In this document: positions 28,753-60,748 of the stretch, in pieces | Layout: each line of letters begins with the position of its first letter | Numbering within the stretch: the stretch's first letter is position 1 | Virus record (IMG/VR): IMGVR_UViG_3300009514_000001 | Coordinates: 1-64,000 of that record | Length of the DNA stretch: 64,000 bases | Direction: 5' to 3' (one strand) | The notes under the pieces: model-generated | The model's database searches: none | Told to the model about the DNA's origin: nothing | What the model saw: the letters and a program-made list of their open reading frames with translations, nothing else | Translations under genes and position numbers: made by a program

Positions 28753-29432
28753 ATGTCGCGCTACAAGTTCGAGCCCGGAACCAAAGTCCTCTACCTGGCC
28801 GGAGAGGACATCATCGAGACCACCATCGAGAGGCTCGGCTCAGGCCATCCGGAGATGGGTCCGTCCTACCTCATCACCGTCGGTGAGAGTGACGAGAGTG
28901 AGATCGTGGAGGTCTACGGGGACCATCTCCTGCCCCAGTTGGGGTTGGAGCGAGACAAGACCAAGCCCGCGGGCGTCGTCCGCTACACCTTCCGCGACGA
29001 CAAGGGCCAGCAGTGCTCCCTGGAGTTCAACCGTCACAAGGACAGCGGAATGCTCTGGGTCGGCATCGAGGTCAACCTCCAGGGCACCAAGCTCGTCGCC
29101 GGACGCATGTGTCTCAACCGAGCCCAGGCGATGGTCATCGCCCCCCTGCTCGCTCAGTTCGCCGTGAGCGGGACCCTCTCGTGAGCGTGGTCGAGGAATT
29201 CAGGAAGCTCTGGGAGCAGAAGCACATTGACGCCACCGCTTTCTGGCTGGCAGTGGCTGAGGGGATAGATGAACGAGGCGAGGAGACCGAGTGGGAGCTA
29301 CTTCAGGGGCTGAGGACTTGGCCGGATGGAGTTGCCCACGGGTTGAGGAGCTTCTCGTCAAACATGCAAAAGGGGAGGATACCTTCACAGGCAGTTCTCA
29401 CTACAACGCCAGGACCAACTGTCACACCCTAG
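28753..29432 (+). CDS. Two hypothetical ORFs (28753-29184, 29181-29432)
   Basis: AGGAG RBS and GTGA coupling. Confidence 0.5.
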
Positions 29433-29734
29433 GGTACACAAACTGTACCCGCTAACTTAACAATTTCTGTCTAAATCTCACTTTTTCTCGGTAGTGTAGT
29501 TATACCAACCCCCTAAGTAGGTGAAGGTCATGATGAGGAAAGCCATGATTGTCCGAGTTACCGCAACCGAGTTTGAAACTGACCAGGGGAGGGTGTTCCC
29601 GCACCCTGTCCCCTTTGAGGAAGATCAGGTGCCTTCCGTCGAGGACTTCCAGAAATGGTACGACCATTGGTTTGCCCTTTTCTGCGATGAGTTCTCGGGA
29701 GAGAGAATCGCCGTGCTGCCAAAGAGAGGAGAGG

Positions 29735-30361
29735 ATGCCGAAGAAGGATAAACTTCTGTCTCTCGGCAAAGCCTCCACTTTGCTAGGTCTTCACCCAAAC
29801 ACACTCCGCAACTGGAGTAATGAGGGGAAGATCAAGTCCGTCCGAACGCCTGGGGGTCACCGTAAGTTCCCCCTCTCGGAGGTCCAGAAGCATATGGGGC
29901 TGGAGTCCTCTGAGGATCAACCAGGAAACCGCACCGCCATCTACTGCCGTGTCAGCAGTCACGACCAGAAGAAAAAAGGTGATCTAGAACGCCAGGCGGG
30001 CCGGGTGAGTTCTTACTGCGTCCAGAAAAGCTACCAGGTGGTTGATGTCCTCCAAGATGTCGGGTCTGGTATGTCTGAGAATCGACCTCGTTTGCGTAAG
30101 CTATTCAAGTTGGTGGACGACCACCAAATTGACCGGGTGGTCGTCGAGCACAAGGACCGCCTGACCCGGTTCGGTTTCGGTCTCTTGCAAGCCTACTTCG
30201 GGAGTCACGGAGTGGCCATCGAGTGGACAGAGGAGACTCTGGGGAAATCCTACGAGGAAGAGTTGGTGGAGGACATCTTGTCCCTCATGGCGTCCTTCTC
30301 CGCCCGCATCTACGGCAAGCGTTCCGCTGAAAACAGGAAGAAAGCCCAGGATAATAAATGA
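29735..30361 (+). CDS. tnpA: IS607 serine-recombinase transposase
   Basis: MerR-like HTH (LGLHPNTLRNW..RTPGGHR), then IYCRVSS.DQK..DLERQ and EHKDRLTRFGF. Confidence 0.93.
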   Translation: MPKKDKLLSLGKASTLLGLHPNTLRNWSNEGKIKSVRTPGGHRKFPLSEVQKHMGLESSEDQPGNRTAIYCRVSSHDQKKKGDLERQAGRVSSYCVQKSYQVVDVLQDVGSGMSENRPRLRKLFKLVDDHQIDRVVVEHKDRLTRFGFGLLQAYFGSHGVAIEWTEETLGKSYEEELVEDILSLMASFSARIYGKRSAENRKKAQDNK

Positions 30362-31080
30362 AAATGAGAGTCTGTATCCCATATTTCGGCGCGAAGTTTA
30401 TGAGAGCACCTCACTACCCGGCCCCTCAACACGACACCATTGTGGAGCCTTTTTGTGGGGGTGCGGGTTATTCTCTGAGACATCACATGAAAAAGGTGAT
30501 TCTATTTGACAAGAGTGAGTACGTCGTTGGTGCCTGGAGGTTCCTTCTCAGATCTCCAAAAAAAGAAATACTCAATTTGCCCCTTCTGGAACCTGGTGAG
30601 GACGTATCCGATCTGAGCATCTGCCAAGAGGCAAAGTGGTTGATCGGGTTTTGGATCAATCAGGGATCTGCGGTTCCGAAGAGGACTATGGGGGGCAGGC
30701 GGTCAAATAGAAGATTCGGAACCTGGGGAGATGCTGCCCGTCAGCGACTTGCTGACCAAGTTGGATCCCTTCGTCACTGGGAAATAAATCAGGGGAGTTA
30801 CACAGAAGTGCCTGATATTAAAGCGACTTGGTTTATAGACCCTCCATACCAAATCCAGGGTAAACATTACCCCCACCGCATCGGGGACTATACGGGTTTG
30901 GCTTTATGGTGTCGGAGCCGAAGAGGTCAGGTGATGGTGTGCGAAAGTGAAGGCGCAGACTGGCTTCCTTTCTCTCCTGTCACAACTGTCGTCGGTGCCA
31001 CGCACCGAAAGACAACCGAAGTTCTCTGGACAAACAAAAACGAGGCATTGGTTCCTCCTATCCACAAGGTGGATAAGTAG
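30358..31080 (+). CDS. Dam/D12-class N6-adenine DNA methyltransferase
   Basis: YFGAK, IVEPFCGGAGY (motif I) and FIDPPY (motif IV). Confidence 0.85.
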   Translation: MKMRVCIPYFGAKFMRAPHYPAPQHDTIVEPFCGGAGYSLRHHMKKVILFDKSEYVVGAWRFLLRSPKKEILNLPLLEPGEDVSDLSICQEAKWLIGFWINQGSAVPKRTMGGRRSNRRFGTWGDAARQRLADQVGSLRHWEINQGSYTEVPDIKATWFIDPPYQIQGKHYPHRIGDYTGLALWCRSRRGQVMVCESEGADWLPFSPVTTVVGATHRKTTEVLWTNKNEALVPPIHKVDK

Positions 31081-31082
31081 TT

Positions 31083-32346
31083 ATGTCTGTCGTCCAAAGG
31101 GCATACAAGGTTGAGATCGACCCCAATAACAAGCAACGCACCGCTCTGCGGTGCCGCTCTGCGGTGCCACGCTGGTTGTGCCAGGTGGGCATTCAATTGG
31201 GGACTCTCCCGTAAAATCGAGTCCTACAAGGAGACGAGGAAGTCCCCGAACAACATCGAGCTTCATCGGGAGTTGAATAAGCTCAAGAGGGCCGACCCAG
31301 AGAACGGTGGAATTCCCTGGATGTACAACGTCTCGAAGTGCGCACCACAGGAAGCTCTCCGAGACCTGGATAAAGCGTTCAAGAGCTTCTTCAGACGCTG
31401 TAAGAAGGGGGCCAAGAGAAAAGGTTTCCCTCGGTTTAAATCTCGTCGGAAGAGTCCCCTCAAATTTCGCCTCACAGGGGCTATCAGGACTTCCGAAGAC
31501 GGCAAACAGATCAAACTCCCCAACTTGGGGTGGATCCGGCTCAAAGAGACCGGGTACCTCCCAGGACCCGAGAGGAAAGAAGTGAAAATCCAGTCGGCAT
31601 CACTCTCTGAGCGAGCCGGAAGGTGGTTCGTTTCTCTGACCTGTAAAGTAGAGGTTCCTGATACCGCACCACGACCGAGAACCAAAGTCGTTGGGGTGGA
31701 TGTTGGAATCAAATCTCTTGCGGTGACGAGCGACGGACAGGTGTTCGAGAATCCGAAAGCCCTGGCTCGTGTGCAACGCCGCTTGCGGCGAGCACAAAAG
31801 GCACTGGCTAGGAAACAGAAGGGCAGTAGGAATCGGGAGAAGGCACGTAGGAGAGTTGCGAAGCTCTACTATCGGGTGTCGTGCATCCGACAAGATGCTC
31901 TACACAAAGCCACCAGTGAGATCGTGAAGGGCGCAGATGTAGTCTGCATCGAGTCCCTGAACGTCTCTGGGATGTTGAAGAACAGGAAACTCTCTCGTGC
32001 TCTTTCTGACGCATCCCTGTCGGAGTTCTTGCGTCAGTTGGCCTACAAGGCTGAGTGGGCCGGTGTTGAGGTGGTAGAGGCCGACAGGTTCTACCCATCG
32101 AGCAAGACCTGTTCTGGGTGTGGTCACGTCAAACAGGACTTGTCTTTGTCTGATCGTACCTACTCTTGTGGGGAGTGTGGTTTGGTGATGGACCGAGACC
32201 TGAATGCCGCAATCAATTTGAAAAACTTGGCCCCGAGTTCCGGGGTGTCAGCCTGTGGAGAGAATGTAAGACCCCAGTCGGAGCTTGCTCGGGTTGGGGC
32301 TATCTCTGCGAAACAGGAACCGAACACAGGAGCTACACCATGTTAG
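31083..32346 (+). pseudogene. tnpB: TnpB RNA-guided nuclease, frameshifted by a 13-bp duplication at 31141-31166
   Basis: GVDVG, CIESL and DRDLNAA RuvC residues and the Zn ribbon are intact; removing one CCGCTCTGCGGTG restores MSVVQRAYKVEIDPNNKQRTALRCHAGCARWAFNW. Confidence 0.88.
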
Positions 32347-32471
32347 CTTTTGGTAAGTTTCGGAGAACGGTTGATGACCCCTCAGGGAGGGTATGACGTG
32401 CTGACGGCCAAGGGTGTGAGAGTCGTCCAACTGGTCTACTTCGGTCCCATCAAGGGTCGGGTACTCAAGTC

Positions 32472-51455: not shown

Positions 51456-51812
51456 ATGAAACTACTCAGGCCCTCCCGTTGCAGCCAGTGCGGACGCACC
51501 ATCCAGGTTCCAGGGCGCGGTTCCTACCGCATCGCCTGTGAGTGTGGCCACCTCAACGAATACCGCGGCACCCCCTCCCGGAAGTGGGAGAAGCCAACGC
51601 CTCCGCGAGAGCCGGCCCCCAGGATTGTGCCCGAGCCTCGACCGGCACCGGAGCCGGAACCAGAGCCTCTCCCCGAGTGGAACAGCAGGATGCTCAAGGC
51701 CGAGCTGTTCACCACCGCCACGGAGTGGTCCCTGGATGTCAGCACTGACAGCACCAAGGCAGAAATCATCGAGGCCCTCAAAGACCTCGAAGCCAGCCGG
51801 AGCGGAGAATGA
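51456..51812 (+). CDS. Small protein: Zn ribbon + Pro-rich linker + SAP/HeH-like helix pair
   Basis: CxxC..CxC, PEPE linker and KAEL..A....V....TKAEIIEAL. Confidence 0.55.
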   Translation: MKLLRPSRCSQCGRTIQVPGRGSYRIACECGHLNEYRGTPSRKWEKPTPPREPAPRIVPEPRPAPEPEPEPLPEWNSRMLKAELFTTATEWSLDVSTDSTKAEIIEALKDLEASRSGE

Positions 51813-54768
51813 CAGCCATGAATCCTCGCCTCCAACTGGAGAGGTTGTCGCAAAAGGTCTCGCGTGAGTTCCTCCGGGCTCTTGACCGGGACGAGTACGA
51901 GGAGGCTAACAACATTCTGCGGGAGTTCTCTCGCAAGGCCCTTCCTATCCTGCAATCTCTCGACAAGGAGTTGACTGGAAGGAACGATAGCAGACTCACG
52001 GAGAAAGGACTGTATGAGGCCTTGTTCGAAGGGTCCGGCTCCTATGTCTACTACCTGAGCGACGGGGGCTACAGCCGGTTGGTGTTTGACATCATGCAGA
52101 CAATGGGCTCCTCTTCGCTCCCGTTTGGCATCGAAAGAGGCCTGGCAACAGCCAGGACGCTCTCCCGTTGGGACGAGATGAGAAAGGCGAGCGGAGGTCT
52201 TCTGGCCGAGCTTGAGAGGAGAGTGGAAGCTCTCCTCTCTGAGGCGGAAAGTAGGGAGGGCAAAATCACCTACGAGGAAGCCAAAGAGATAGGAGGACCC
52301 TTCAAGGAGTGGTTCCTGGCCACATTCCTCATCGAGAGGAGTACCACCCCGAGGGGAGGAAAGAAGGTCAAGGAAGAGGCAAGGAAACTCCTCTGGGCGC
52401 TGACGAACGGCATCTACATAGGAGGGGGGTGGACAATCCAATCGGTCCGCGCCGCTTGGGGACAATTCCGGCCTCTGGCACCCACCCTTGTCAAGCTCTT
52501 CTCAGATGAAGGGAAAGACAAGGACCACCTCCGCGAGAAGAAGACCTCCCTCGCGACCTACGTCAACCAAAGGGGGTTGTCGAACAAGACCTTCCTCAAG
52601 TACGTGGGGGTTATCGAAGCCGTCATAGGCAACCTCAAAGGGTGGCGCCGCAAGGCCCTGGGGAGGGGATTGAGAGTCATCCTCGCCAGTCCCGACCACT
52701 TTCGCGGAACAGCCTCCGGGAAATATCGAAGAGAGGAGGATGCTCTCTACGTTCGAGCCACGCCCAAGGTCCTGAAGAGGACTTCTGGGGCGTATGCGTC
52801 CCCCGAATACATCATCGTCCACGAACTGGGTCACAGGTACGAGTACAAACAGCGAGTCCCCCTGGACTTCGACAGGACCCCTTGGACAACAACCAGGTAC
52901 TCCCGCACGGAAGGCGAGGCCTTCGCGGAACTGTTCGCTCTCGGCCACTTCGGATATCCAGAGTACAGCGACATCCTAGTCAAGTTTGAGGAAGTCATGA
53001 CGGGGAAGAAAAAGAGGCGAGCAACGATGGGCCCCAGAGCAATCGCCCGTAGCATCGCCGAGCGTCTCTCCTGCGGACCTCACCCATGCCAGTGTGGTGG
53101 GGCCTGTCAGTGTGGCGGCACCTGCCGGTCCAAGGGCGCCGACCAGGCCAAGGACGCTGAGCAGATGGTCTACTTCGACGCTGACCACATCGACGTCGAC
53201 GTGACCATCGGTGAGGTCGAAATCGAGAACAAGGGTGGACAGCCGGACATGATAGGCGGATTAAAGGGGGAGTACTACGGAGACATCCCGTTCTCCGAAA
53301 CTTACGGAGACTTGGGTGCCAAGCTCCAGTTCGGTTCCTGTTTCAATGAGGTTGCCCAGGCGGAAAATAGCTTGGTTCTCGCTAGTAATAACCACCCTTG
53401 CGACGGCGGATTTTACGGTTGTGAACCAACCCCCTATCCGCCCAGGACTCACGTCCTCTCCGCAGGCTGTAACACCGATGAACTACCGGCTGAGCCCAAA
53501 CATAGAGACCCTGTCAGACCTCGTCAAGGGGACTCCTGGAAGCTCGCCGGCTGGGATCGAGGTCTCACTGTGGACCAGGTCGAGTTGAAGCTCTCCTACG
53601 CCGACAGAGAGGCCTACGTCCCTTTTGTACCGGGCGCTCGACCTGACCTGCAAGACCAGCAGGAAGAGCGCCCTTTCAACGAGTACATCCACCCCGACGC
53701 CCTCCCGAACGACGACGAGAGCGAGGCTCACCCAGCCACTCCGACGCCGGCGGAGGTCCTCATTCGCAAGGCATCAGCCGGCAGAGTCAGACCCTACCTC
53801 CTCAAGTACCTGAAGATTCTCGGCGAGAAGATTCGCCCTAAGATCAAGATTCGGGGTCGAGGTGGTTGGGCCAAACCCTGTGGACCAGCAGAGATCCTGG
53901 CACCACCACGATTGTCCTCCAGAAGCGCATCCTCGACGACCCGTCCACCCTGGAAAGGGTCGTTGCCCATGAGGTGGTCCACCACGTTGAGTTCATGAGC
54001 GTGGCGCGGGAAGACATCAAGAGGATGAAGTACCATCCCGAGCACGGGAAAATGTTCCTGGATTTGGCTGCCAAGGTAAATGCAGCGATGGGCTCCGGCT
54101 TCGTGACCGTCACATCAGACCAGACATACGTCGAGACTGAGAACACCCGCGAGTTCTACCTCCTGGTAGAACCTCTCCCCTACAGAGGAGAGACCCGATA
54201 CGGCTGGGCGTGGGGAGCCAGGATGACCAAGCGCACCAAGGCGAAGGTGGAGCGCTCCATAAGGAGTGGTGGGAAGCTGGTTCGGACCCGGGATGGACGG
54301 TGGCTAAACGGGGCCAAGCTCAGTCAAGGGGGGTACTCCCTTGCCAAGCCGGGAAGCCCCGAGGAAGATGAGATCAAACACATCCTGGGCATCAAGCCGG
54401 AAAAGCACGCCAGTGCCAGGAGAACGGTGGTTCTGCCCAAGGGTTTCCGCAAGGCGGTCGAGAAGCACGCCAGTGGCGTGTTCGTCATCCTGGGTGGCAA
54501 GAAGTACAAGCTCGTCAAGAAGGGTCACAGCGGAGCCTGGGAGGTCGAGGGAGTGCCCGGTCGACGAGGCGGCGGTCCTCATGTCGGCGAGAGATACATG
54601 CTCAGGGCCAAGCCCTCAAACACGATGTTGTCAGCCTCCCCAGGTGAGTCCCGGACGCCGAGGAGAGTCTACCTCTCCCCGACGACAAGCCGAGGCACGG
54701 CAGACAGGGGGAGCGACGAGAAGGTCTACTTCCCGTTCGACGAGATGGTCCTCTTGCTTCCTCGCTAG
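51809..54768 (+). CDS. Large multi-domain protein with two HExxH zincin motifs, apparently split by a frameshift near 53866
   Basis: IVHELGHR in ORF 51809-53998; VAHEVVHH in ORF 53866-54768. Confidence 0.55.
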
Positions 54769-56747
54769 ATCCCTAACAGGTCCATCAGCTCATCGACCTG
54801 GCGTTGCTCCTCGGGGCTCATGGACTTGCGCTCCACTTCTTCGACCACGGTCTTGATGGCCTTCGGAGAGACCGTCGGGGCCACGTCTGGCTGCGGGAAC
54901 TTGGTCACTCGACCTGTGTGGAAGTGGAACTCCACCGGGACCGGGATGCGGAGCTTCTCAGCGATGGCCAGACGGTGGTTGCCTTCGGCGACCTTGGCAG
55001 AGCCGTCACGGCCGATGTGGAAGTGCAGCGGCTCCTTCGGGTTCCACCCGTTGCGCCGCATGTCCTCCACCAGAGCGTCCCACTTCATTGGTCCTTCGAG
55101 CCAGACGCTCTTGCCCCCGACCTTGGCGTAGCCTGAGCGGCTGTTATCTCGGGTCCAGCGATACTCCTTGTGAGGGGCCATCTCCCGAGGCTTGAACGGT
55201 TGGGGCATCGAATCGTCGAGAGCCTTATCTCCGTCCTCGGACCATCGTCGGATGACCTCGTCGACGGACACGCCGCGGCGGAGACGGTAGTAACCGGCCA
55301 CCCGCTGCATGTACTCGCCGGCGACCCTCTGGGCCATCTGGGACTGAATCAGCTCATCATTCTCCCGTTCTATCCAGAGACGTCGGACCCCATCCAGAAG
55401 TTTATGGGAGGGGTAGCTCTGCCCAAGCTGTTTGGGGGTCGTGCCCATTGCGTTACAGAAGTCGACCAACCACTGCGAGCGCTTTGCGGCGTACCCAGGG
55501 TCCCTCCCGTAGGGCCCGAAACAGAACTCGAAAACCGCTCGCATCTCCTCGGGGTGAGGGGGCCGCCCCCAGACCAGATTGTACTCGGTGATGATTCTGC
55601 CCAGGGCGTCGCCCATGATGTCGGCCGGACCATCGCCGTTGTACATCGCCTCATCGGCAGGGTCGACACCTGGGAAGGCGTTGAGCAGGCCACCCTTGTC
55701 GACCGGCGGAGGGGAGATGCCTGGGTTGCCCGGTGTGATGGCCCACCAGCCGGCGACCTTGTTCGCCAGTCTCCTCTCACCCTCGGCGACCAACTCCATG
55801 CTCTTGACTGGGGCCGGCTCGACGCCGACAACCTGGTAGTCCCGGAGACGACCTCGGTCGAGCGTCTTCATGAGGCTCTGCTCATTGATGACCACCCGCC
55901 ACAGGTCGCGAATCTCGCCGCCTCCCAGGTCGCTGGCGATGCCGTAGGCCCGGTCGGCGTCCGTCGTCAGGAAGATGCCTGGAGGAACCGTCCGTGCGTT
56001 CTCGTAGTGGCGCCTGTCACGCGTCGGGCGGGCCGTCCATAGGAGGAGCCACTTGCCAGGCTTCGAGGTGCTCCCAGGGCTCTCCAGCTCCCTCACGAGG
56101 CCGAAGTAGTCTGACTCGTCTGCGGAGTTCTGGAAGAAGTAGGAGTCCTGGCCCTCCAGGACCTCCATCACCACGACCTTGCTACCTTCAAGGTAGGCTG
56201 AGAATCCCATCAGGTCGCCGAGGCGGACATAGCCACCGGTGACCGGAGTGGTCAGGCCCGTCTCCTCATTGTACATCGGCTCGACCACCACATCGTGGAC
56301 GCCGGACCAAGTCTTGAACCGCTTGGTGGCTTTCTCGATGTGGCCCACGAGAGTATCCAGGTTGACCTTGCTCTCGTCGATTACCTTCTGAGCCGAGGGG
56401 CGATAGTTCTCGTAGAGCTGGTCCTCGGTCATGCTAAGCTCTTCGACTCCCTGGAGCTGGTCGAGGTAGTCGTAGACCTTACGCCAGGTGCTGAACAGCT
56501 CCGTGGGGACGCGGTCGAATAGACCCCGGTCCACCACCATCAAGCTGATCTCAGAGGCGTTGCCGTCTCTCAGGGCCTGGGCGTAGTTCGAGCCGATGTG
56601 GGGCTCCAGAAGGTCTGCCAGGTCGACCCCGTTGATGCGGTTCTGACGGAGGCGCTCGTACCTCTTCCAGGCATACCGAGCCCCCTCGGCCAGGTCAGCG
56701 TCCAGGTCGTCGAGGTACTTCTTCGCGTCAATAGTGACTCGGCCCAT
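54765..56747 (-). CDS. Large multi-domain protein with a C-terminal ParB/Srx-like domain
   Basis: LVEDMRRNGW..PL...VAEGNHRLAIA; internal LANKVA and MAQRVA motifs. Confidence 0.6.
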   Translation of the reverse strand: MGRVTIDAKKYLDDLDADLAEGARYAWKRYERLRQNRINGVDLADLLEPHIGSNYAQALRDGNASEISLMVVDRGLFDRVPTELFSTWRKVYDYLDQLQGVEELSMTEDQLYENYRPSAQKVIDESKVNLDTLVGHIEKATKRFKTWSGVHDVVVEPMYNEETGLTTPVTGGYVRLGDLMGFSAYLEGSKVVVMEVLEGQDSYFFQNSADESDYFGLVRELESPGSTSKPGKWLLLWTARPTRDRRHYENARTVPPGIFLTTDADRAYGIASDLGGGEIRDLWRVVINEQSLMKTLDRGRLRDYQVVGVEPAPVKSMELVAEGERRLANKVAGWWAITPGNPGISPPPVDKGGLLNAFPGVDPADEAMYNGDGPADIMGDALGRIITEYNLVWGRPPHPEEMRAVFEFCFGPYGRDPGYAAKRSQWLVDFCNAMGTTPKQLGQSYPSHKLLDGVRRLWIERENDELIQSQMAQRVAGEYMQRVAGYYRLRRGVSVDEVIRRWSEDGDKALDDSMPQPFKPREMAPHKEYRWTRDNSRSGYAKVGGKSVWLEGPMKWDALVEDMRRNGWNPKEPLHFHIGRDGSAKVAEGNHRLAIAEKLRIPVPVEFHFHTGRVTKFPQPDVAPTVSPKAIKTVVEEVERKSMSPEEQRQVDELMDLLGI

Positions 56748-56751
56748 GGCC

Positions 56752-57705
56752 TTAGTCCACGGCAAGGTAGTAGTGGAAGTTAATACCCAGGTCGCTCATG
56801 ACCTTGGTGACGTCGCGGAACGACATCTTGGGGATGTCGGACTCGTTCTGGCGGGCCCACTCGTAGAACTTCTTGGTGCCCGTCCGCTTGCGCTTGCGGG
56901 GGATGGCCGTCGGCTCGTTGATCTTGTCGGTCAGGTCCCTGACCATGAAGCTCTGCGGTTCGGCAACGACCCTGACCTTGGGGCCGGAGACGTCGACAGG
57001 GTCCATCCCTACCGGGTCGATGCGAATGCCCTTGTGAGTGCGTTCGTCGAGCATCAGGCGGTAGCTGAGGCCCAGGACTGACTTGGCCATGCGAAGGGCC
57101 TTCGTGTAGTCCGCCGAGTAGAGAGAGGAGGACACGTAGTCCAGGAGAGCCTTGCCGAGGCCATCCAGGTACGTCTGGGACCCCAAGCTGAACTGGTCGA
57201 CCTTCTTCCCCCGCTTGCCGGCGTAGGTGAGGTCCCAGACCTTCACCCAGTCCGCGAGACGCTGAACGCGGATGCGACCGTTCTCGAACTTCTCCCCGAC
57301 GGCCAGGGGCTTCCCGGTCGCCCGCTGGACCTTCTTGATGAGTTCGGGGTGCCACTGGCCCTGGTCCCGTGTTCCATACTCCAGCTTCCGAAGCTCTCGG
57401 TACTTCTCGAACTCACGGTCGAGACTGCGAGCTTGTCTAAGGATGGGCAGAAGACGATCTCGAAGCTCCGGCTTGGCGTGAGCCAGACGGACCACCTCGT
57501 CGAAGAGGGCGGCCTCCTTGTCCGGCTGCGGATGGATGTCGCGCTTGTCGAAGTCCTCGCGCTCAACACGCTCCTCTCCATCCTTGTCGAGGTCAGCGAC
57601 CTGAGACGCCCGACGACCCAACCAGCTTCCTCTGGCCTCCTTGGTTGGGCCGCTGACCATCTGGTTCACGACTCGGCGAGCAATCTCCCTGGCGTCCATA
57701 TTCAT
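56752..57705 (-). CDS. Hypothetical protein, possibly virion-associated (IARRVV and VRLAHAKPELRDRLLPIL motifs)
   Basis: GGAG RBS; shared motifs. Confidence 0.6.
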   Translation of the reverse strand: MNMDAREIARRVVNQMVSGPTKEARGSWLGRRASQVADLDKDGEERVEREDFDKRDIHPQPDKEAALFDEVVRLAHAKPELRDRLLPILRQARSLDREFEKYRELRKLEYGTRDQGQWHPELIKKVQRATGKPLAVGEKFENGRIRVQRLADWVKVWDLTYAGKRGKKVDQFSLGSQTYLDGLGKALLDYVSSSLYSADYTKALRMAKSVLGLSYRLMLDERTHKGIRIDPVGMDPVDVSGPKVRVVAEPQSFMVRDLTDKINEPTAIPRKRKRTGTKKFYEWARQNESDIPKMSFRDVTKVMSDLGINFHYYLAVD

Positions 57706-57760
57706 CTCCCAATTGGTCCGCACTGGCTGTCCAATACTCCGGTTGTATAGGAGGCATATC

Positions 57761-57860
57761 ATGCCAGCAGATTCCACATTTGAACAACGACGCATCGCCC
57801 GCCGAGTGGCGGACGCCTACTTCAGAGCCCATCCCGCTGCGCCACGTGACAACAGGGCCA
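57761..57860 (+). pseudogene. N-terminus of an IARRVA-motif gene truncated by the IS remnant
   Basis: GGAGG RBS; MPADSTFEQRRIARRVADAYF runs into tnpB-derived sequence. Confidence 0.5.
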
Positions 57861-58154
57861 TGCTCAGGAGTCAAGGTTATCGAAGCGGACCGATGGTTTC
57901 CCAGCTCGAAGACGTGTTCTGGGTGCGGGGAAGTAAAGTCTGACTTGAGTTTGTCGGACCGGACGTACGAATGTTCGGGGTGCGGTCTCAAACTAGATCG
58001 AGACCTGAACGCCGCAATCAATTTGAAGCAGTTGGCCGGGAGTTCGGCGGTATCAGCCTGTGGAGAGGACGTAAGACCATCAGGAGAGCTTGCTCACCTG
58101 ATGGCGACCTCGATGAAGCAGGAACCGGACAGAGGAAAAAGTTCTGGAGAACGG
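57860..58154 (+). mobile_element. tnpB: IS607 remnant: 3' end of tnpB plus the right end/omega-RNA region
   Basis: GVKVIEADRWFPSSKTCSGCG..DRDLNAAINL; ends GGAGAACGG like the element ending at 32370. Confidence 0.85.
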
Positions 58155-58182
58155 GTCCAGTTGACTCCTCGCGGTCGTATAT
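58154..58182 (+). promoter_or_regulatory. Putative phage promoter GGTCC-N18-GTATAT overlapping the IS right end
   Basis: Exact spacing; the first G is the last base of the IS end. Confidence 0.6.
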
Positions 58183-58217
58183 AGGTATAAGACCTATTCC
58201 GTCGCAAGGAGAAGACG

Positions 58218-58958
58218 ATGACGAACGCCAACAGTACCCTCACAGCCGCCGCTCTTTCTGATGCAGACAACGATGCGCTCACCCGCATCATCACGCGCAA
58301 GAAAGGCATCTCCCGAGGCAAGGGAAACAACCGCAAAGTCTACGGAGACGACCTGGTCGAAGTCCTCGTGGTGACCGGCTTCGACTATCACGAGGTCGTC
58401 GAGCGCTCCTGGCAGGAGCTGAAGAACCTCGACATCAACGACGTCGTTGGAGAGCTTTCCGGACGTCTCGACGGCGAAGGCAACCCCATCACCCGAGACG
58501 ACATCGGCGCCGCGATGAAGGAGCTGCAAGCCAGCTTCTCGGCCAGCCTCGACGGCCGCAACCACGCCTCGACAGAGGGTAACTTCGAGACCCTGGAGGT
58601 CGACGGACAGAAGGTTCGAACAGTCAAGGTCTACAAGGGCCCGAAGACGGGGCAGAAGCGGGCCACCGAGGGTCTGGCACCGGGGACCATCTACATCCAC
58701 GGCCTCAAACTCTCAGAGAAGGTCCTGGAGCCAGCAGCCAATGGGCCCAAGCCCAAGAGCAATTCCTCGGCGAAAACCATCGCCAAGCGGTTCGTTCGTG
58801 GTAAGCTCTCGGTGGGTTCCTACGTGAGCTACGAGCTGCCTCCCGAAGGCAAGCCGTTCATCGTTCGTCCAGGAGGGACGACCCCGTTCCATTCGGACGG
58901 CAGTCGCATCCGGTTCCGCAACGCCACCGTCGAAACCCTCTTCGGTATTGCAGGGTGA
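58218..58958 (+). CDS. Hypothetical protein
   Basis: 246-aa ORF with AGGAG RBS. Confidence 0.7.
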   Translation: MTNANSTLTAAALSDADNDALTRIITRKKGISRGKGNNRKVYGDDLVEVLVVTGFDYHEVVERSWQELKNLDINDVVGELSGRLDGEGNPITRDDIGAAMKELQASFSASLDGRNHASTEGNFETLEVDGQKVRTVKVYKGPKTGQKRATEGLAPGTIYIHGLKLSEKVLEPAANGPKPKSNSSAKTIAKRFVRGKLSVGSYVSYELPPEGKPFIVRPGGTTPFHSDGSRIRFRNATVETLFGIAG

Positions 58959-58959
58959 G

Positions 58960-58988
58960 TACGACCCCGCATGAGCGGGGATGTTCCC
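58960..58988 (+). repeat. Solitary type I-E-like CRISPR repeat unit
   Basis: TACGA-CCCCGC-ATGA-GCGGGG-ATGTTCCC has the 5+6+4+6+8 layout of I-E repeats. Confidence 0.55.
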
Positions 58989-58999
58989 AAACGGGAACA

Positions 59000-59089
59000 G
59001 GTCATTGACCGCTATTGACCTCCTCCGCGAGCACGGAGATTCCCGGTCATTGACCGCTATTGACCTCCTCCGCGAGCACGGAGATTCCC
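59000..59089 (+). repeat. Perfect 45-bp tandem duplication
   Basis: 59000-59044 equals 59045-59089. Confidence 0.9.
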
Positions 59090-59099
59090 AAAGGAGCAC

Positions 59100-59633
59100 A
59101 TGACAGACACCATTCTTTTCCAAAATCGCTGGGTCAAGGTCATCGACCGTGACGGCTACACCATGGTCCACGGGGCCGGGAATGCCGTCGCGGTTCTCCC
59201 CTTTCGAGGGGCGGTCGGCCAAGCCACAACCGCTGACGTGGAGTTCCTGGCTCGCATCGAGCCCTGTCCTCCCCACGGACCGAAGCCCCACCTCTGTGGC
59301 ATTACGGGGGGCATCGAGGGCCGGGAGAAGCCGGTCGACGCTGCGGTGAGGGAGACCTTCGAGGAGTCTGGGTTCCGGGTCACCAGGGAACAACTGGTTC
59401 GCCTGGGCATGGTATGGCCGAGCAAGATGTCGACCACCATCATGCACCTGTTCGCCGTCGATGTGTCCAGCGTCCCCTGGGAGACTCCCCCGGGGGACGG
59501 GACCGTCTACGAGGCCCAGTCGATGACTGTGTGGCTCCCTTACGAGAAGTCCGCCCTGGTCCCAGACGCAGTCTACTGCTCGATGATGCTACGCCTGGGA
59601 CGGTTCTTCCGTGAGGGCCTCTGGGGCGGGTGA
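59100..59633 (+). CDS. Nudix hydrolase (ADP-ribose pyrophosphatase-like)
   Basis: Nudix box GGIEGREKPVDAAVRETFEESGF; N-terminal AVAVLP. Confidence 0.88.
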   Translation: MTDTILFQNRWVKVIDRDGYTMVHGAGNAVAVLPFRGAVGQATTADVEFLARIEPCPPHGPKPHLCGITGGIEGREKPVDAAVRETFEESGFRVTREQLVRLGMVWPSKMSTTIMHLFAVDVSSVPWETPPGDGTVYEAQSMTVWLPYEKSALVPDAVYCSMMLRLGRFFREGLWGG

Positions 59634-59883
59634 GTCTCCGAAGAGGTCGAGTATGCCGCCCTCGGAGGGCGCCGCGGAACGTTCTTCGTTGAGTTGGAAG
59701 AGTCGGTCGAGTAGTTCATCCTCGACTGGTCGTGTCCAGCATAGCTCGGAACGTCGAGGTCGTCCCACCCGTAGCTTCTGAGGACCTCCATCTCTTCGTG
59801 GAGCTGTTGAAGCGGGTAGTTCGCCGGCCTTGATAGTGTTGTAGAGCTTGATAGTGTTGTAGAGCTTCGTCAGGACCTGGTTC
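59631..59883 (-). pseudogene. MmeI/type IIL-like R-M C-terminal tail, copy A (frameshifted)
   Basis: LTKLYNTIK..LHEEM..YGW.DL..ILDLFGD; homologous to 62527-62815. Confidence 0.65.
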
Positions 59884-60526
59884 CTACGTCCTGAATGTGG
59901 ACGGATTCACGCTGGCTCCGGAAGAGCGTGACGCCCTTATCGACAAGGACCCGAGGAACGCCCAAAGAATCTTCCCCTACATCGGAGGAAAAGAGGTCAA
60001 TAGCTCACCGACTCAAGACTTCCATCGATACATCATCAACTTCGGCCAGATGTCGCTGGAAGAGGCCGAACAGTGGTCAGACCTGGTTGAGCGGCTGAGA
60101 AGACTCGTCAAACCGGAGAGAGATAAGCTCAAAAGAGACAATTACCGACTACTCTGGTGGAGGTTTGGAGAGCCCCAAGTAGGCCTCTACCGCGCCCTCT
60201 CCGGACTACATCGTTGTTTGGTTACGGCTGCGACTTCGAAGCATGTGATGTTCTCGTTTCAGCCGGCGGGGAGGGTGTTCGGTCACGTCCTCTACGTGTT
60301 CCCTTTGGAGTCGTGGACGGCCTTCGCGGTGCTCCAGTCTCGGGTCCACGAGTACTGGGCTCGCATCATGGGCTCTTCTCTTCAAGGAACTTCCCGCTAT
60401 ACGGCGGAGACCTGCTTTCGAACCTTCCCCTTTCCTCGTGAGGACCCCAAAGAGGTCATCCTCTCGGAAGGCATCGGACAGCGGCTCTATGCCGCCCGAG
60501 CCGAGTGGATGACCTCGAATCAGAAA
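59879..60526 (+). pseudogene. MmeI/type IIL-like target-recognition-domain fragment
   Basis: RIFPYIGGKEVN, RYIINF, WWRF, TSKH, FAVLQSRVHEYWA, RYT..TCFRTFPFP and RLYAARA. Confidence 0.75.
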
Positions 60527-60555: not shown

Positions 60556-60748
60556 GGGAGGGGGTCCGGGCGCTCCGGAGCCCGACGTAGACGAGAGTTC
60601 AGCGCGGCCGTCACTGGGTCCGGGCGCTCCGGAGCCCGACGTAGACGAGAGTTCAGCGCGGCCGTCACTGCGGCCGTCACTGGGTCCGGGCGCTCCGGAG
60701 CCCGACGTAGACGAGAGTTCAGCGCGGCCGTCACTGCGGCCGTCACTG
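60556..60748. repeat. Compound tandem repeat (GGTCCGGGCGCTCCGGAGCCCGACGTAGACGAGAGTTCAGCGCGGCCGTCACT x3 with sub-duplications); related single copy at ~62836-62905
   Basis: Read directly from the sequence. Confidence 0.85.

What the first reader, a model, noticed from the sequence alone, without database searches (positions are those of the whole stretch)
57860..58182. tnpB/omega-RNA remnant whose right end forms part of a phage promoter, so its guide would read promoter sequence
Seen: only the last ~300 bp of a second IS607 remain; it ends GGAGAACGG like the element at 32370, and its final G is the first G of a GGTCC-N18-GTAT motif. The would-be guide is GTCCAGTTGACTCCTCGCGG. Its first 8 nt recur after TGG at the 21669 promoter (GTCCAGTT), and the 9988 promoter is similar (GTCCACTTGGACTCC). 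Established: IS607 inserts at GG, and the omega-RNA spans the tnpB 3' end and takes its guide from the flank. Inference: the IS inserted into a promoter and regenerated it; the retained scaffold could guide a TnpB in trans to promoter-family sites. No intact TnpB is present in this window.
Basis: partly seen in the sequence, partly recalled or inferred. Interest (0 to 1): 0.6.

Follow-up and report, generated by a model that had tools for sequence, protein, structure and literature searches.

The report
IS607 guide-RNA relic beside phage promoter
A 222-kb phage genome keeps the last ~295 bases of a dead IS607 jumping gene, including most of its guide-RNA scaffold, pressed against a conserved phage promoter; it looks like an ordinary insertion-then-deletion scar, not a regulator of the phage's promoters.

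Summary
Window 57861-58154 is the 3' end of a tnpB gene (codons ~316-408) plus an IS607-type right end that stops at GGAGAACGG. Its last G is the first G of a GGTCC-N18-GTAT motif, which is over-represented and conserved at orthologous sites in two related phages.

Those relatives show the history. One has the empty site: small ORF, hairpin, G-run, promoter, gene. So the IS inserted at the G-run on the 5' edge of a pre-existing promoter. A later deletion removed the left end, about 315 tnpB codons and ~40 bp of phage DNA.

A covariance model built from 27 relatives matches the remnant full-length (97.9 bits). However, the remnant lacks the terminal hairpin present in all other copies, and two of five pairs in the 5' stem are broken.

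An apparently intact TnpB (419 aa, D-E-D present) lies outside the window at 219-220 kb. A second solo scaffold lies at 53288-53511 (minus strand).

The would-be guide matches no other site beyond 8 nt, and that 8-mer occurs mostly outside promoters, so promoter-family targeting is not supported. Most likely this is a young relic. Use as a trans guide against IS-free alleles remains possible but untested.

The parts
57716..57750 (+). Upstream promoter-like element (GGTCC...TTGTATAGG) in front of a small ORF. It probably drives transcription into the remnant.
   Evidence: Sequence. Conserved in relative L104 (TGTCC...CGTATAGGAGG). Function is inferred.
57761..57943 (+). Small ORF (60 aa). The first ~31 codons are phage-derived and homologous to a 29-aa ORF in relatives. 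The rest reads out of frame into the tnpB fragment.
57860..57861 (.). Left deletion breakpoint. Phage homology to relatives stops after ...CATGCTCA, inside what is a hairpin (CTCACCnGGAGGGTGAG) in relatives. The tnpB homology starts here.
   Evidence: Three-way alignment A4.
57861..58139 (+). tnpB 3' fragment (codons ~316-408: Zn-ribbon/TNB domain and the last RuvC motif DRDLNAAINL). The frame is still open.
   Evidence: dN/dS against copy 3 is 0.28 and dS is 0.58.
58011..58154 (+). Omega-RNA/reRNA-type scaffold. The pseudoknot, the central RAGATH-18-like hairpin and helix H4 are kept. Terminal hairpin H3 is deleted and 2 of 5 pairs in the 5' stem are broken.
   Evidence: Model R1: 97.9 bits, E 4e-28, model positions 1-173. 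H3 analysis. Sub-threshold RAGATH-18 hit at 58057-58124, 30 bits.
58146..58154 (+). Right-end terminus GGAGAACGG. The last GG is the recombination core.
   Evidence: Flanks diverge immediately after this in 34 relatives.
58155..58174 (+). Would-be guide (flank read by the scaffold). It equals the -35-like box minus its first G, plus the promoter spacer.
58154..58180 (+). Promoter-like motif GGTCC-N18-GTAT of the downstream gene.
   Evidence: Enrichment. Orthologous conservation in L104 and L105 with a divergent spacer.
58218..58958 (+). Downstream phage gene (246 aa, no Pfam family) served by that promoter.
29432..32370 (+). Copy 1: complete IS607-type element. It has a MerR-resolvase TnpA, a D12-class methyltransferase cargo, and a tnpB frameshifted by a 13-bp duplication.
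53288..53511 (-). Second solo omega-RNA-type scaffold with all helices intact and no recognisable tnpB coding sequence upstream.
   Evidence: Model R1: 68.2 bits, E 3e-19, full length. Sequence.

Best explanation
The feature is the scar of two ordinary events in a 222-kb phage genome.

1. An IS607-family element (serine-recombinase type, carrying a TnpB nuclease and its right-end guide-RNA scaffold) inserted at a run of G's. That run forms the 5' edge of a pre-existing phage promoter (GGTCC-N18-GTAT) for gene 58218-58958. These elements recombine at GG, so the right end finishes in GG and is followed directly by TCC. The promoter therefore stayed whole, and the sequence a guide RNA would copy from the flank is necessarily promoter sequence.

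2. A later deletion removed the left end, any transposase, about 315 codons of tnpB and ~40 bp of phage DNA. That left 295 bp.

The remnant is most likely a young, functionless relic. It is probably transcribed passively from the small-ORF promoter upstream, and its RNA scaffold is damaged. It has no role in controlling the phage's promoter family.

Shown: homology, boundaries, the empty site in a relative, scaffold architecture and its defects, and absence of secondary targets. Inferred: promoter activity, transcription through the remnant, and lack of function.
For: Identity and boundaries.

Ancestral state: relative L104 (neighbour gene 90% identical) has small ORF, hairpin, CAAAGGGGG, then TCCAGTT...CGTATATAGG, then the gene, with no tnpB sequence. 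Relative L105 has the same promoter.

GG targeting and a scaffold ending ...CGG are established for IS607.

Scaffold model: 27 relatives give 94.6% of cells paired against 82.6% in shuffles, with 0 of 500 shuffles as high. Slid controls give 34-64%.

Defects in the remnant:
- Only 13 unpaired nt lie between the H4 strands, where all 27 relatives and the other solo copy have a 30-41-nt hairpin.
- In IMG/VR, TnpB-linked variants still keep at least a 4-bp mini-hairpin, and none has a spacing under 17 nt.
- Two non-canonical pairs occur in the 5' stem.
- The score is 97.9 bits against 121-133 for the gene-linked copies.

Young age: the tnpB frame is open over 93 codons, and dN/dS of 0.28 matches that between the two full copies (0.36).

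No secondary targets.

Decay is common in this genome: copy 1 is frameshifted, and there is a second solo scaffold and a ~40-nt right-end scrap.
Against: - The remnant keeps the whole scaffold region rather than an arbitrary piece. Its pseudoknot (GUUC:GAAC), central hairpin (perfect 8-bp stem) and H4 (CCGGA:UCUGG, compensated relative to CCGAA:UUCGG) are intact.
- A second remnant in the same genome also keeps just the scaffold. No left-end-only remnant exists.
- An apparently active TnpB is available in trans.
- Hairpin loss might be tolerated: distal parts of some ISDra2 and ISFba1 stem-loops are dispensable.
- Absence of function is inferred, not shown. No RNA data could be obtained.
Confidence: 0.65

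Rival explanations
1. Solo guide RNA used in trans. The remnant (and the one at 53288-53511) still yields a working guide RNA. This is loaded by the intact TnpB at 219-220 kb and cuts the IS-free allele of this promoter (G-rich TAM + GTCCAGTTGACTCC...) in co-infecting relatives. Repair from the remnant-bearing genome would spread this allele, or the cut would simply cripple the competitor.
For: - Full-length model matches for both solo scaffolds.
- The key helices are intact, with a compensated H4.
- Intact TnpB with D-E-D and Zn finger.
- The self site is preceded by ACGG, analogous to the TCGG self-avoidance of CboTnpB.
- Protein-less elements encoding omega-RNAs that need TnpB in trans have been proposed (PMC10055086).
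- Related phages with the empty site exist.
- Only right-end remnants are found: two or three, against zero left-end remnants.
Against: - The terminal hairpin is missing, unlike every gene-linked copy examined, and the 5' stem is weakened.
- Full deletion of any of the three core stem-loops abolished ISDra2 TnpB activity (PMC10821889).
- The remnant's lineage differs from copy 3 (dS 0.58, 82% nt identity), so cross-loading is unproven.
- The nearest empty-site relative already mismatches the guide at positions 9, 11, 15 and 16.
- No expression data.
Confidence: 0.2
2. One reading: the retained scaffold guides a TnpB (or a dead derivative) to the family of GGTCC-N18-GTAT promoters and modulates them, like a TldR-type RNA-guided transcription factor.
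For: - The first 8 nt of the guide recur at two other promoter-family sites: 21670 (preceded by ctgG) and G000 98883 minus strand (preceded by GGGG).
- TldRs bind with ~6-nt seeds and use 9-11-nt guides (10.1101/2023.11.30.569447).
Against: - No site extends to 9 nt.
- The other 9 family sites listed match only 4-5 nt contiguously.
- 11 of the 13 other GTCCAGTT sites are not promoter sites.
- The only full-length open TnpB keeps all RuvC catalytic residues, so it is not TldR-like. No further TnpB-like gene exists in the genome.
- The shared 8-mer is simply the -35-like box itself.
Confidence: 0.04
3. Cis-regulatory exaptation. The remnant matters as DNA or RNA context for gene 58218. The deletion removed half of the hairpin that follows the small ORF in relatives, so transcription may now read from the upstream promoter through the remnant into the gene. 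The A-rich tract left by the hairpin deletion also lies just upstream of the -35-like box.
For: - The relatives' hairpin is half-deleted here.
- No terminator-like site on the plus strand between 57716 and 58218.
- The remnant lies in the sense orientation between two promoter-like elements.
Against: - The relatives' hairpin has no U-tract, so it may not be a terminator at all.
- There is no evidence of selection on this arrangement.
- The effect, if any, would be a side-effect of the scar.
Confidence: 0.1

Closest known systems
IS607-family elements with TnpB and right-end guide RNA (CboIStron IS607; 10.1101/2023.11.20.567912)
   Same: - Serine-recombinase partner (present in copy 1).
- GG core dinucleotide.
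- Scaffold ends ...CGG, directly followed by the guide.
- G-rich sequence on the left-end side.
- Self site distinguished by a C at -3 (ACGG here, TCGG there).
   Different: - The remnant has no left end, no transposase and only the last 93 codons of tnpB, so it cannot move or be re-homed.
- No group I intron.
- The TAM of this lineage has not been determined. Left flanks seen are TAGG, GAGG and GGGG.
ISFba1 IS607 TnpB with RAGATH-18-derived reRNA (PMC11061315)
   Same: Same architecture: a 5' hairpin whose loop pairs with the extreme 3' end of the scaffold (pseudoknot), a long central RAGATH-18-like hairpin, and 3' stem-loops before the guide. The remnant and copy 3 give full-length but sub-threshold RAGATH-18 hits (30 and 26 bits).
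   Different: - Scores are below Rfam's gathering cut-off (44.9).
- The proteins here are closer to ISDra2 TnpB (E 3e-65) than that paper reports for ISFba1-type TnpBs against previously characterised TnpBs (under 35% similarity).
- The remnant lacks the last stem-loop.
ISDra2 TnpB-omega-RNA (PDB 8H1J, 8EXA)
   Same: Copy-3 TnpB aligns over residues 5-394 with all catalytic residues. The guide RNA overlaps the tnpB 3' end and the right end, with a ~16-nt guide taken from the flank.
   Different: ISDra2 is IS200/IS605 (Y1 transposase, TTGAT TAM).
PATE-like protein-less IS605 elements encoding omega-RNAs (PMC10055086)
   Same: An omega-RNA locus without its own nuclease gene, which would need a TnpB encoded elsewhere in the genome.
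   Different: PATEs keep both transposon ends and remain mobilisable. The two phage remnants have only the right end and are deletion products.
TldR, nuclease-dead TnpB repressors on prophages (10.1101/2023.11.30.569447)
   Same: Phage-borne TnpB-family guide RNA whose guide is complementary to promoter DNA.
   Different: - No nuclease-dead TnpB is present.
- The guide matches the remnant's own flank, which lacks a TAM, not a separate target promoter.
- No conserved gene partnership.

Membership tests
IS607-family insertion sequence | Serine-recombinase TnpA (MerR HTH + resolvase domain) | tested here: not met
   There is none in or next to the remnant. The only resolvase in the genome is in copy 1 at 29936-30355. 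The remnant is a fragment of such an element, not a member.
IS607-family insertion sequence | Right end terminating in the GG core, identical in independent copies, with unrelated flanks beyond it | tested here: met
   GGAGAACGG occurs at four scaffold-bearing loci of the genome and GGAGAACGG or near-identical termini in 34 relatives, whose flanks diverge right after it.
IS607-family insertion sequence | Left end | tested here: not met
   No left-end homology anywhere except copy 1. In the remnant, the phage sequence runs directly into tnpB codon ~316.
TnpB nuclease gene | Complete WED/REC/RuvC protein with the D-E-D triad | tested here: not met
   The remnant has only the TNB/Zn-ribbon domain and the last RuvC motif. 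The feature is met by copy 3 outside the window.
TnpB omega-RNA / IS607 reRNA scaffold | Conserved structured RNA overlapping the tnpB 3' end and right end, supported by covariation | tested here: met
   Model R1 matches full-length at 97.9 bits.
TnpB omega-RNA / IS607 reRNA scaffold | Pseudoknot between the 5' hairpin loop and the 3' terminus | tested here: met
   GUUC (58042-58045) pairs with GAAC (58149-58152). In the family, 98.1% of cells are paired, with CG/UG/UA/GC types at one pair.
TnpB omega-RNA / IS607 reRNA scaffold | Terminal stem-loop (H3) enclosed by H4 | tested here: not met
   The remnant has 13 unpaired nt, against 30-41-nt hairpins in 28 other copies. TnpB-linked IMG/VR variants keep at least a mini-hairpin.
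TnpB omega-RNA / IS607 reRNA scaffold | Rfam RAGATH-18 (RF03064) membership | tested here: inconclusive
   30 bits, E 7e-4, full model length, but below the gathering score of 44.9. No hit at the gathering threshold.
TnpB omega-RNA / IS607 reRNA scaffold | RNA is expressed, processed and bound by TnpB | not testable with these tools
   No sequencing run was listed for this stretch.
TldR-type RNA-guided transcription factor | Nuclease-dead TnpB homologue | tested here: not met
   The only full-length open TnpB keeps D, E and D. There are no other TnpB-like genes.
TldR-type RNA-guided transcription factor | Guide complementary to a TAM-flanked promoter target elsewhere | tested here: not met
   The best non-self match is 8 contiguous nt. 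Every other site has at least 2 mismatches in the first 12 nt.
Phage promoter family GGTCC-N18-GTAT | Over-represented, upstream of genes in the sense direction, boxes and spacing conserved in orthologous positions while the spacer varies | tested here: met
   Transcription initiation itself was not tested. No phage sigma factor or single-subunit RNA polymerase was detected.

The most novel reading that the evidence does not exclude
The phage keeps a small set of nuclease-less right-end scaffolds (58011-58154 and 53288-53511) as trans guides for its one intact TnpB. Each is aimed at the IS-free allele of its own locus. In mixed infections the phage would then cut related genomes at those sites and either convert them or out-compete them. 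This would be a transposon-derived, array-free form of RNA-guided inter-phage warfare or allele drive.
Probability: 0.12. Interest if true: 0.7.

Novelty: new member of a known kind. Interest (0 to 1): 0.3.

Why it matters
As it stands, this is a well-documented example of how IS607 elements land on G-rich promoter edges in a large phage and then decay from the left. The decay leaves guide-RNA scaffolds behind. That is useful for annotation, and it warns that 'guide matches promoter' can be a trivial consequence of where the element inserted.

It would matter more if the solo scaffolds proved to be loaded by the intact TnpB. That would show that immobile transposon relics can persist as trans-acting guides in a virus.

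Tried and rejected
- Megablast of 56000-60000 against the phage collection: no match.
- The neighbour protein in IMG/VR: no relatives. Relatives came only from the protein search plus contig look-up.
- Sequencing-run search: none was listed, so expression and population polymorphism could not be examined and read laying was not used.
- Exact right-junction searches: nothing in IMG/VR. Two metagenome hits proved to be chance 20-mers with no other similarity.
- RNAalifold on the plain MAFFT alignment proposed one long helix between columns 57-66 and 201-210. I rejected its 3' half in favour of H4 (154-158 with 201-205), because pair 156:203 shows GC/AU/CG/UG covariation whereas 64:203 has four G-G clashes. 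I kept the 57-60:207-210 part as a pseudoknot.
- Rfam at gathering thresholds: no hit.
- I checked whether the 729-aa ORF crossing the second remnant is a real in-frame insertion. Homologues cover only ~37-40% of it and are mostly 400-500 aa long. The part over the remnant is therefore most likely read-through, not a conserved insertion.
- A 17/20 match of the second remnant's guide at 171337 has no protein-level paralogy behind it.
- Search for a phage sigma factor or T7-type RNA polymerase to explain the promoter motif: nothing above cut-off, and the T7-type search rang in no control genome.

Full report
**Setting.** The window is bases 1-64000 of a 222,005-bp IMG/VR virus record whose first 40 bases recur at 221,910, implying a ~96-bp terminal overlap. 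G+C is about 60%, dropping to 52-56% over 29-33 kb, where a complete IS sits.

**Observation.**
- The stretch 57861-58139 translates to the last 93 residues of a TnpB (E 1.2e-39 against the window's own full-length copy). It carries the Cas12f1-like TNB domain (E 3.9e-17).
- At the DNA level it is 82% identical to a third copy at G000 219062-219327 and 73% to the copy at 32104-32331.
- It ends with GGAGAACGG at 58146-58154, the same terminus as the other copies.
- G58154 starts a GGTCC-N18-GTAT motif. That motif occurs 8 times in the window against 1.26 expected. The N18 sites genome-wide lie upstream of an RBS and a start codon in the sense direction.

**History of the locus.**
- The downstream gene (58218-58958) has a 90%-identical homologue on contig L104 and a 74%-identical one on L105.
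- L104 shows the uninterrupted site. A 29-aa ORF is followed by a short hairpin, ~25 bp, a run of five G's, and then TCCAGTT...CGTATATAGG and the gene.
- L105 has the same promoter. It also has an independent IS607 copy, 92% identical to copy 1 over tnpA, inserted ~190 bp upstream in the opposite orientation inside the small ORF. This intergenic region is therefore a repeated landing site.
- In the window, phage homology stops at 57860 inside the relatives' hairpin and resumes exactly at G58155.
- The simplest reading is insertion at GG within the G-run, followed by a deletion from the phage hairpin to tnpB codon ~315.
- IS607 transposases require GG, prefer TGGG in the studied case, and leave GG at both junctions. 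The guide-RNA scaffold there ends ...UCGG (10.1101/2023.11.20.567912). ACGG followed by GTCC here fits that rule.
- The promoter boxes were never disrupted, so 'regeneration' is a by-product of GG-to-GG recombination.
- The same two boxes and the 18-nt spacing are conserved at a second orthologous site in both relatives, while the spacers differ. That supports a promoter-type element, although initiation was not tested and no phage sigma factor or polymerase was found.

**The RNA scaffold.**
- Relatives of the TnpB (45-57% identity) occur in Chloroflexota and Asgard-archaeal assemblies. Their 3' regions end in the same ...GGAGAACGG-type terminus, after which multi-copy elements diverge completely.
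- On a 27-sequence alignment (A3) I defined four elements:
  - a 5' hairpin;
  - a pseudoknot between its loop (GUUC) and the 3' end (GAAC);
  - the base of a long central hairpin;
  - helix H4 (CCGAA:UUCGG), which encloses a variable hairpin H3.
- These pairs are 94.6% canonical against 82.6% in shuffles (0 of 500 as high) and 34-64% when slid.
- The layout mirrors the ISFba1 IS607 reRNA: a 5' loop-3' end pseudoknot, a central RAGATH-18 hairpin and 3' stem-loops (PMC11061315). Both the remnant and copy 3 give full-length but sub-threshold RAGATH-18 hits.
- A covariance model of the alignment finds exactly four full-length matches in the genome:

| Copy | Location | Score (bits) |
|---|---|---|
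| Copy 3 | G000 219020-219183, minus strand | 132.9 |
| Copy 1 | window 32206-32370 | 121 |
| The remnant | window 58011-58154 | 97.9 |
| A further solo scaffold | window 53288-53511, minus strand | 68.2 |

**State of the remnant's scaffold.**
- Kept: the pseudoknot; a central hairpin with a perfect 8-bp stem; and H4, where CCGGA:UCUGG is a compensated version of CCGAA:UUCGG.
- Lost: H3. Only 13 unpaired nt lie between the H4 strands, where all 27 relatives and the other solo copy have a 30-41-nt hairpin.
- In IMG/VR, 19 contigs have the normal spacing and 6 TnpB-type loci have a shortened but still paired H3. None has a spacing under 17 nt.
- Two of the five pairs of the 5' hairpin are also broken.
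- For ISDra2, distal parts of stems can be trimmed. Removing any whole core stem-loop abolished activity in the trimmed scaffold, although deleting one of the corresponding segments alone in the full-length RNA was tolerated (PMC13639567, PMC10821889). The loss is therefore probably, but not certainly, disabling.

**Age.** Over the 93 codons, dN/dS against copy 3 is 0.28 (dS 0.58), similar to copy 1 against copy 3 (0.36). The frame is uninterrupted. Most divergence therefore predates the truncation. The remnant derives from a different IS lineage than copy 3 and has decayed little since.

**A nuclease in trans.** Copy 3 (G000 220293-219037, minus strand, 419 aa) is an uninterrupted solo tnpB. 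It aligns to ISDra2 TnpB over residues 5-394 with the D, E, D residues and both CxxC pairs present. No other TnpB-like gene and only one transposase exist in the genome.

**Targets.**
- The 20-nt flank has no second site in the genome with fewer than 2 mismatches in its first 12 nt.
- The 8-mer GTCCAGTT occurs 14 times. One is the self site, two are other promoter-family sites (21670 and 98883 on the minus strand), and 11 are elsewhere. None extends to 9 nt. The other family sites listed match only 4-5 nt contiguously.
- TldR repressors can bind through ~6-nt seeds, but the nuclease here is not dead and the shared 8-mer is simply the -35-like box. The promoter-family model is therefore not supported.
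- The only sensible target is the IS-free allele of this very site in other phages, as in the homing model for TnpB. The closest empty-site relative already differs at guide positions 9, 11, 15 and 16.

**Verdict.**
- The anatomy and history are secure.
- Function is most likely nil (0.65).
- A trans-guide role against IS-free alleles is the main rival (0.2).
- Expression could not be examined because no sequencing run was listed.

Noticed in passing
window 53288-53511 (minus strand): A second nuclease-less omega-RNA-type scaffold with all helices intact, including a 10-bp H3 and an enlarged central hairpin. It ends GGAGAACGG at 53288 and its would-be guide is GATGTCTCCGTAGTACTCCC. It lies antisense within the non-conserved C-terminal extension of a 729-aa ORF (51809-53998).
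   Followed up: partly
G000 219037-220293 (minus strand; outside the window): A solo tnpB of 419 aa with intact RuvC and Zn-finger motifs and its own scaffold. The right end is at 219020 and the flank is TGTTGTGTTGAATCC. No tnpA lies next to it.
   Followed up: yes
window 30358-31080: The complete IS607 copy carries a cargo gene between tnpA and tnpB: a D12-class N6-adenine DNA methyltransferase (Pfam PF02086, DPPY motif). The whole element has 52-56% G+C against ~60% for the phage.
   Followed up: partly
window 31143-31168: A perfect 13-bp tandem duplication (GCTCTGCGGTGCC twice) frameshifts the copy-1 tnpB after about 20 codons. It is absent from copy 3 and from the near-identical element in relative L105.
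   Followed up: yes
G000 ~221860-221900 (minus strand; about 100 bp before the record's terminal overlap): A scrap of ~40 nt resembles the H3 hairpin plus right-end terminus (...CCTAGCTTTGCCTAGGTTTTGAAGAACGG), followed by TTGAT as at copy 1. It was not detected by the covariance model.
   Followed up: no
L105 1-1690 (related phage contig): An independent IS607 insertion, in the opposite orientation, in the same small-ORF/promoter intergenic region. Its left end (GTTCACAAACTGTACCC...) abuts ...CTACGAGG. This suggests the region is an insertion hot spot.
   Followed up: partly
window 32371-32396: The flank of copy 1's right end (GG TTGATGACC...GGGTATGA) resembles the promoter layout with a spacing one base shorter. 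Copy 1 may also have landed on a promoter-like GG.
   Followed up: no
L104 9915-10946 and L105 5554-6585; homologous region at G000 ~64046-65113, just beyond the window: A gene with a precomputed AcrVA2-like (PF26125) hit, a family of Cas12a inhibitors, lies ~6 kb downstream in a phage that itself carries TnpB, the Cas12 ancestor.
   Followed up: no
window 59000-59089 and 60562-60748: Perfect tandem repeats: 45 bp x2 between the 246-aa gene and the NUDIX gene, and 54/66 bp x2-3 inside an ORF.
   Followed up: no
window 58144-58160: The right-end terminus and the first bases of the flank form an inverted repeat (CTGGA...TCCAG). In RNA this could pair the guide's seed with the 3' strand of H4. 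On the minus strand it scores as a terminator-like hairpin followed by a T-run.
   Followed up: no
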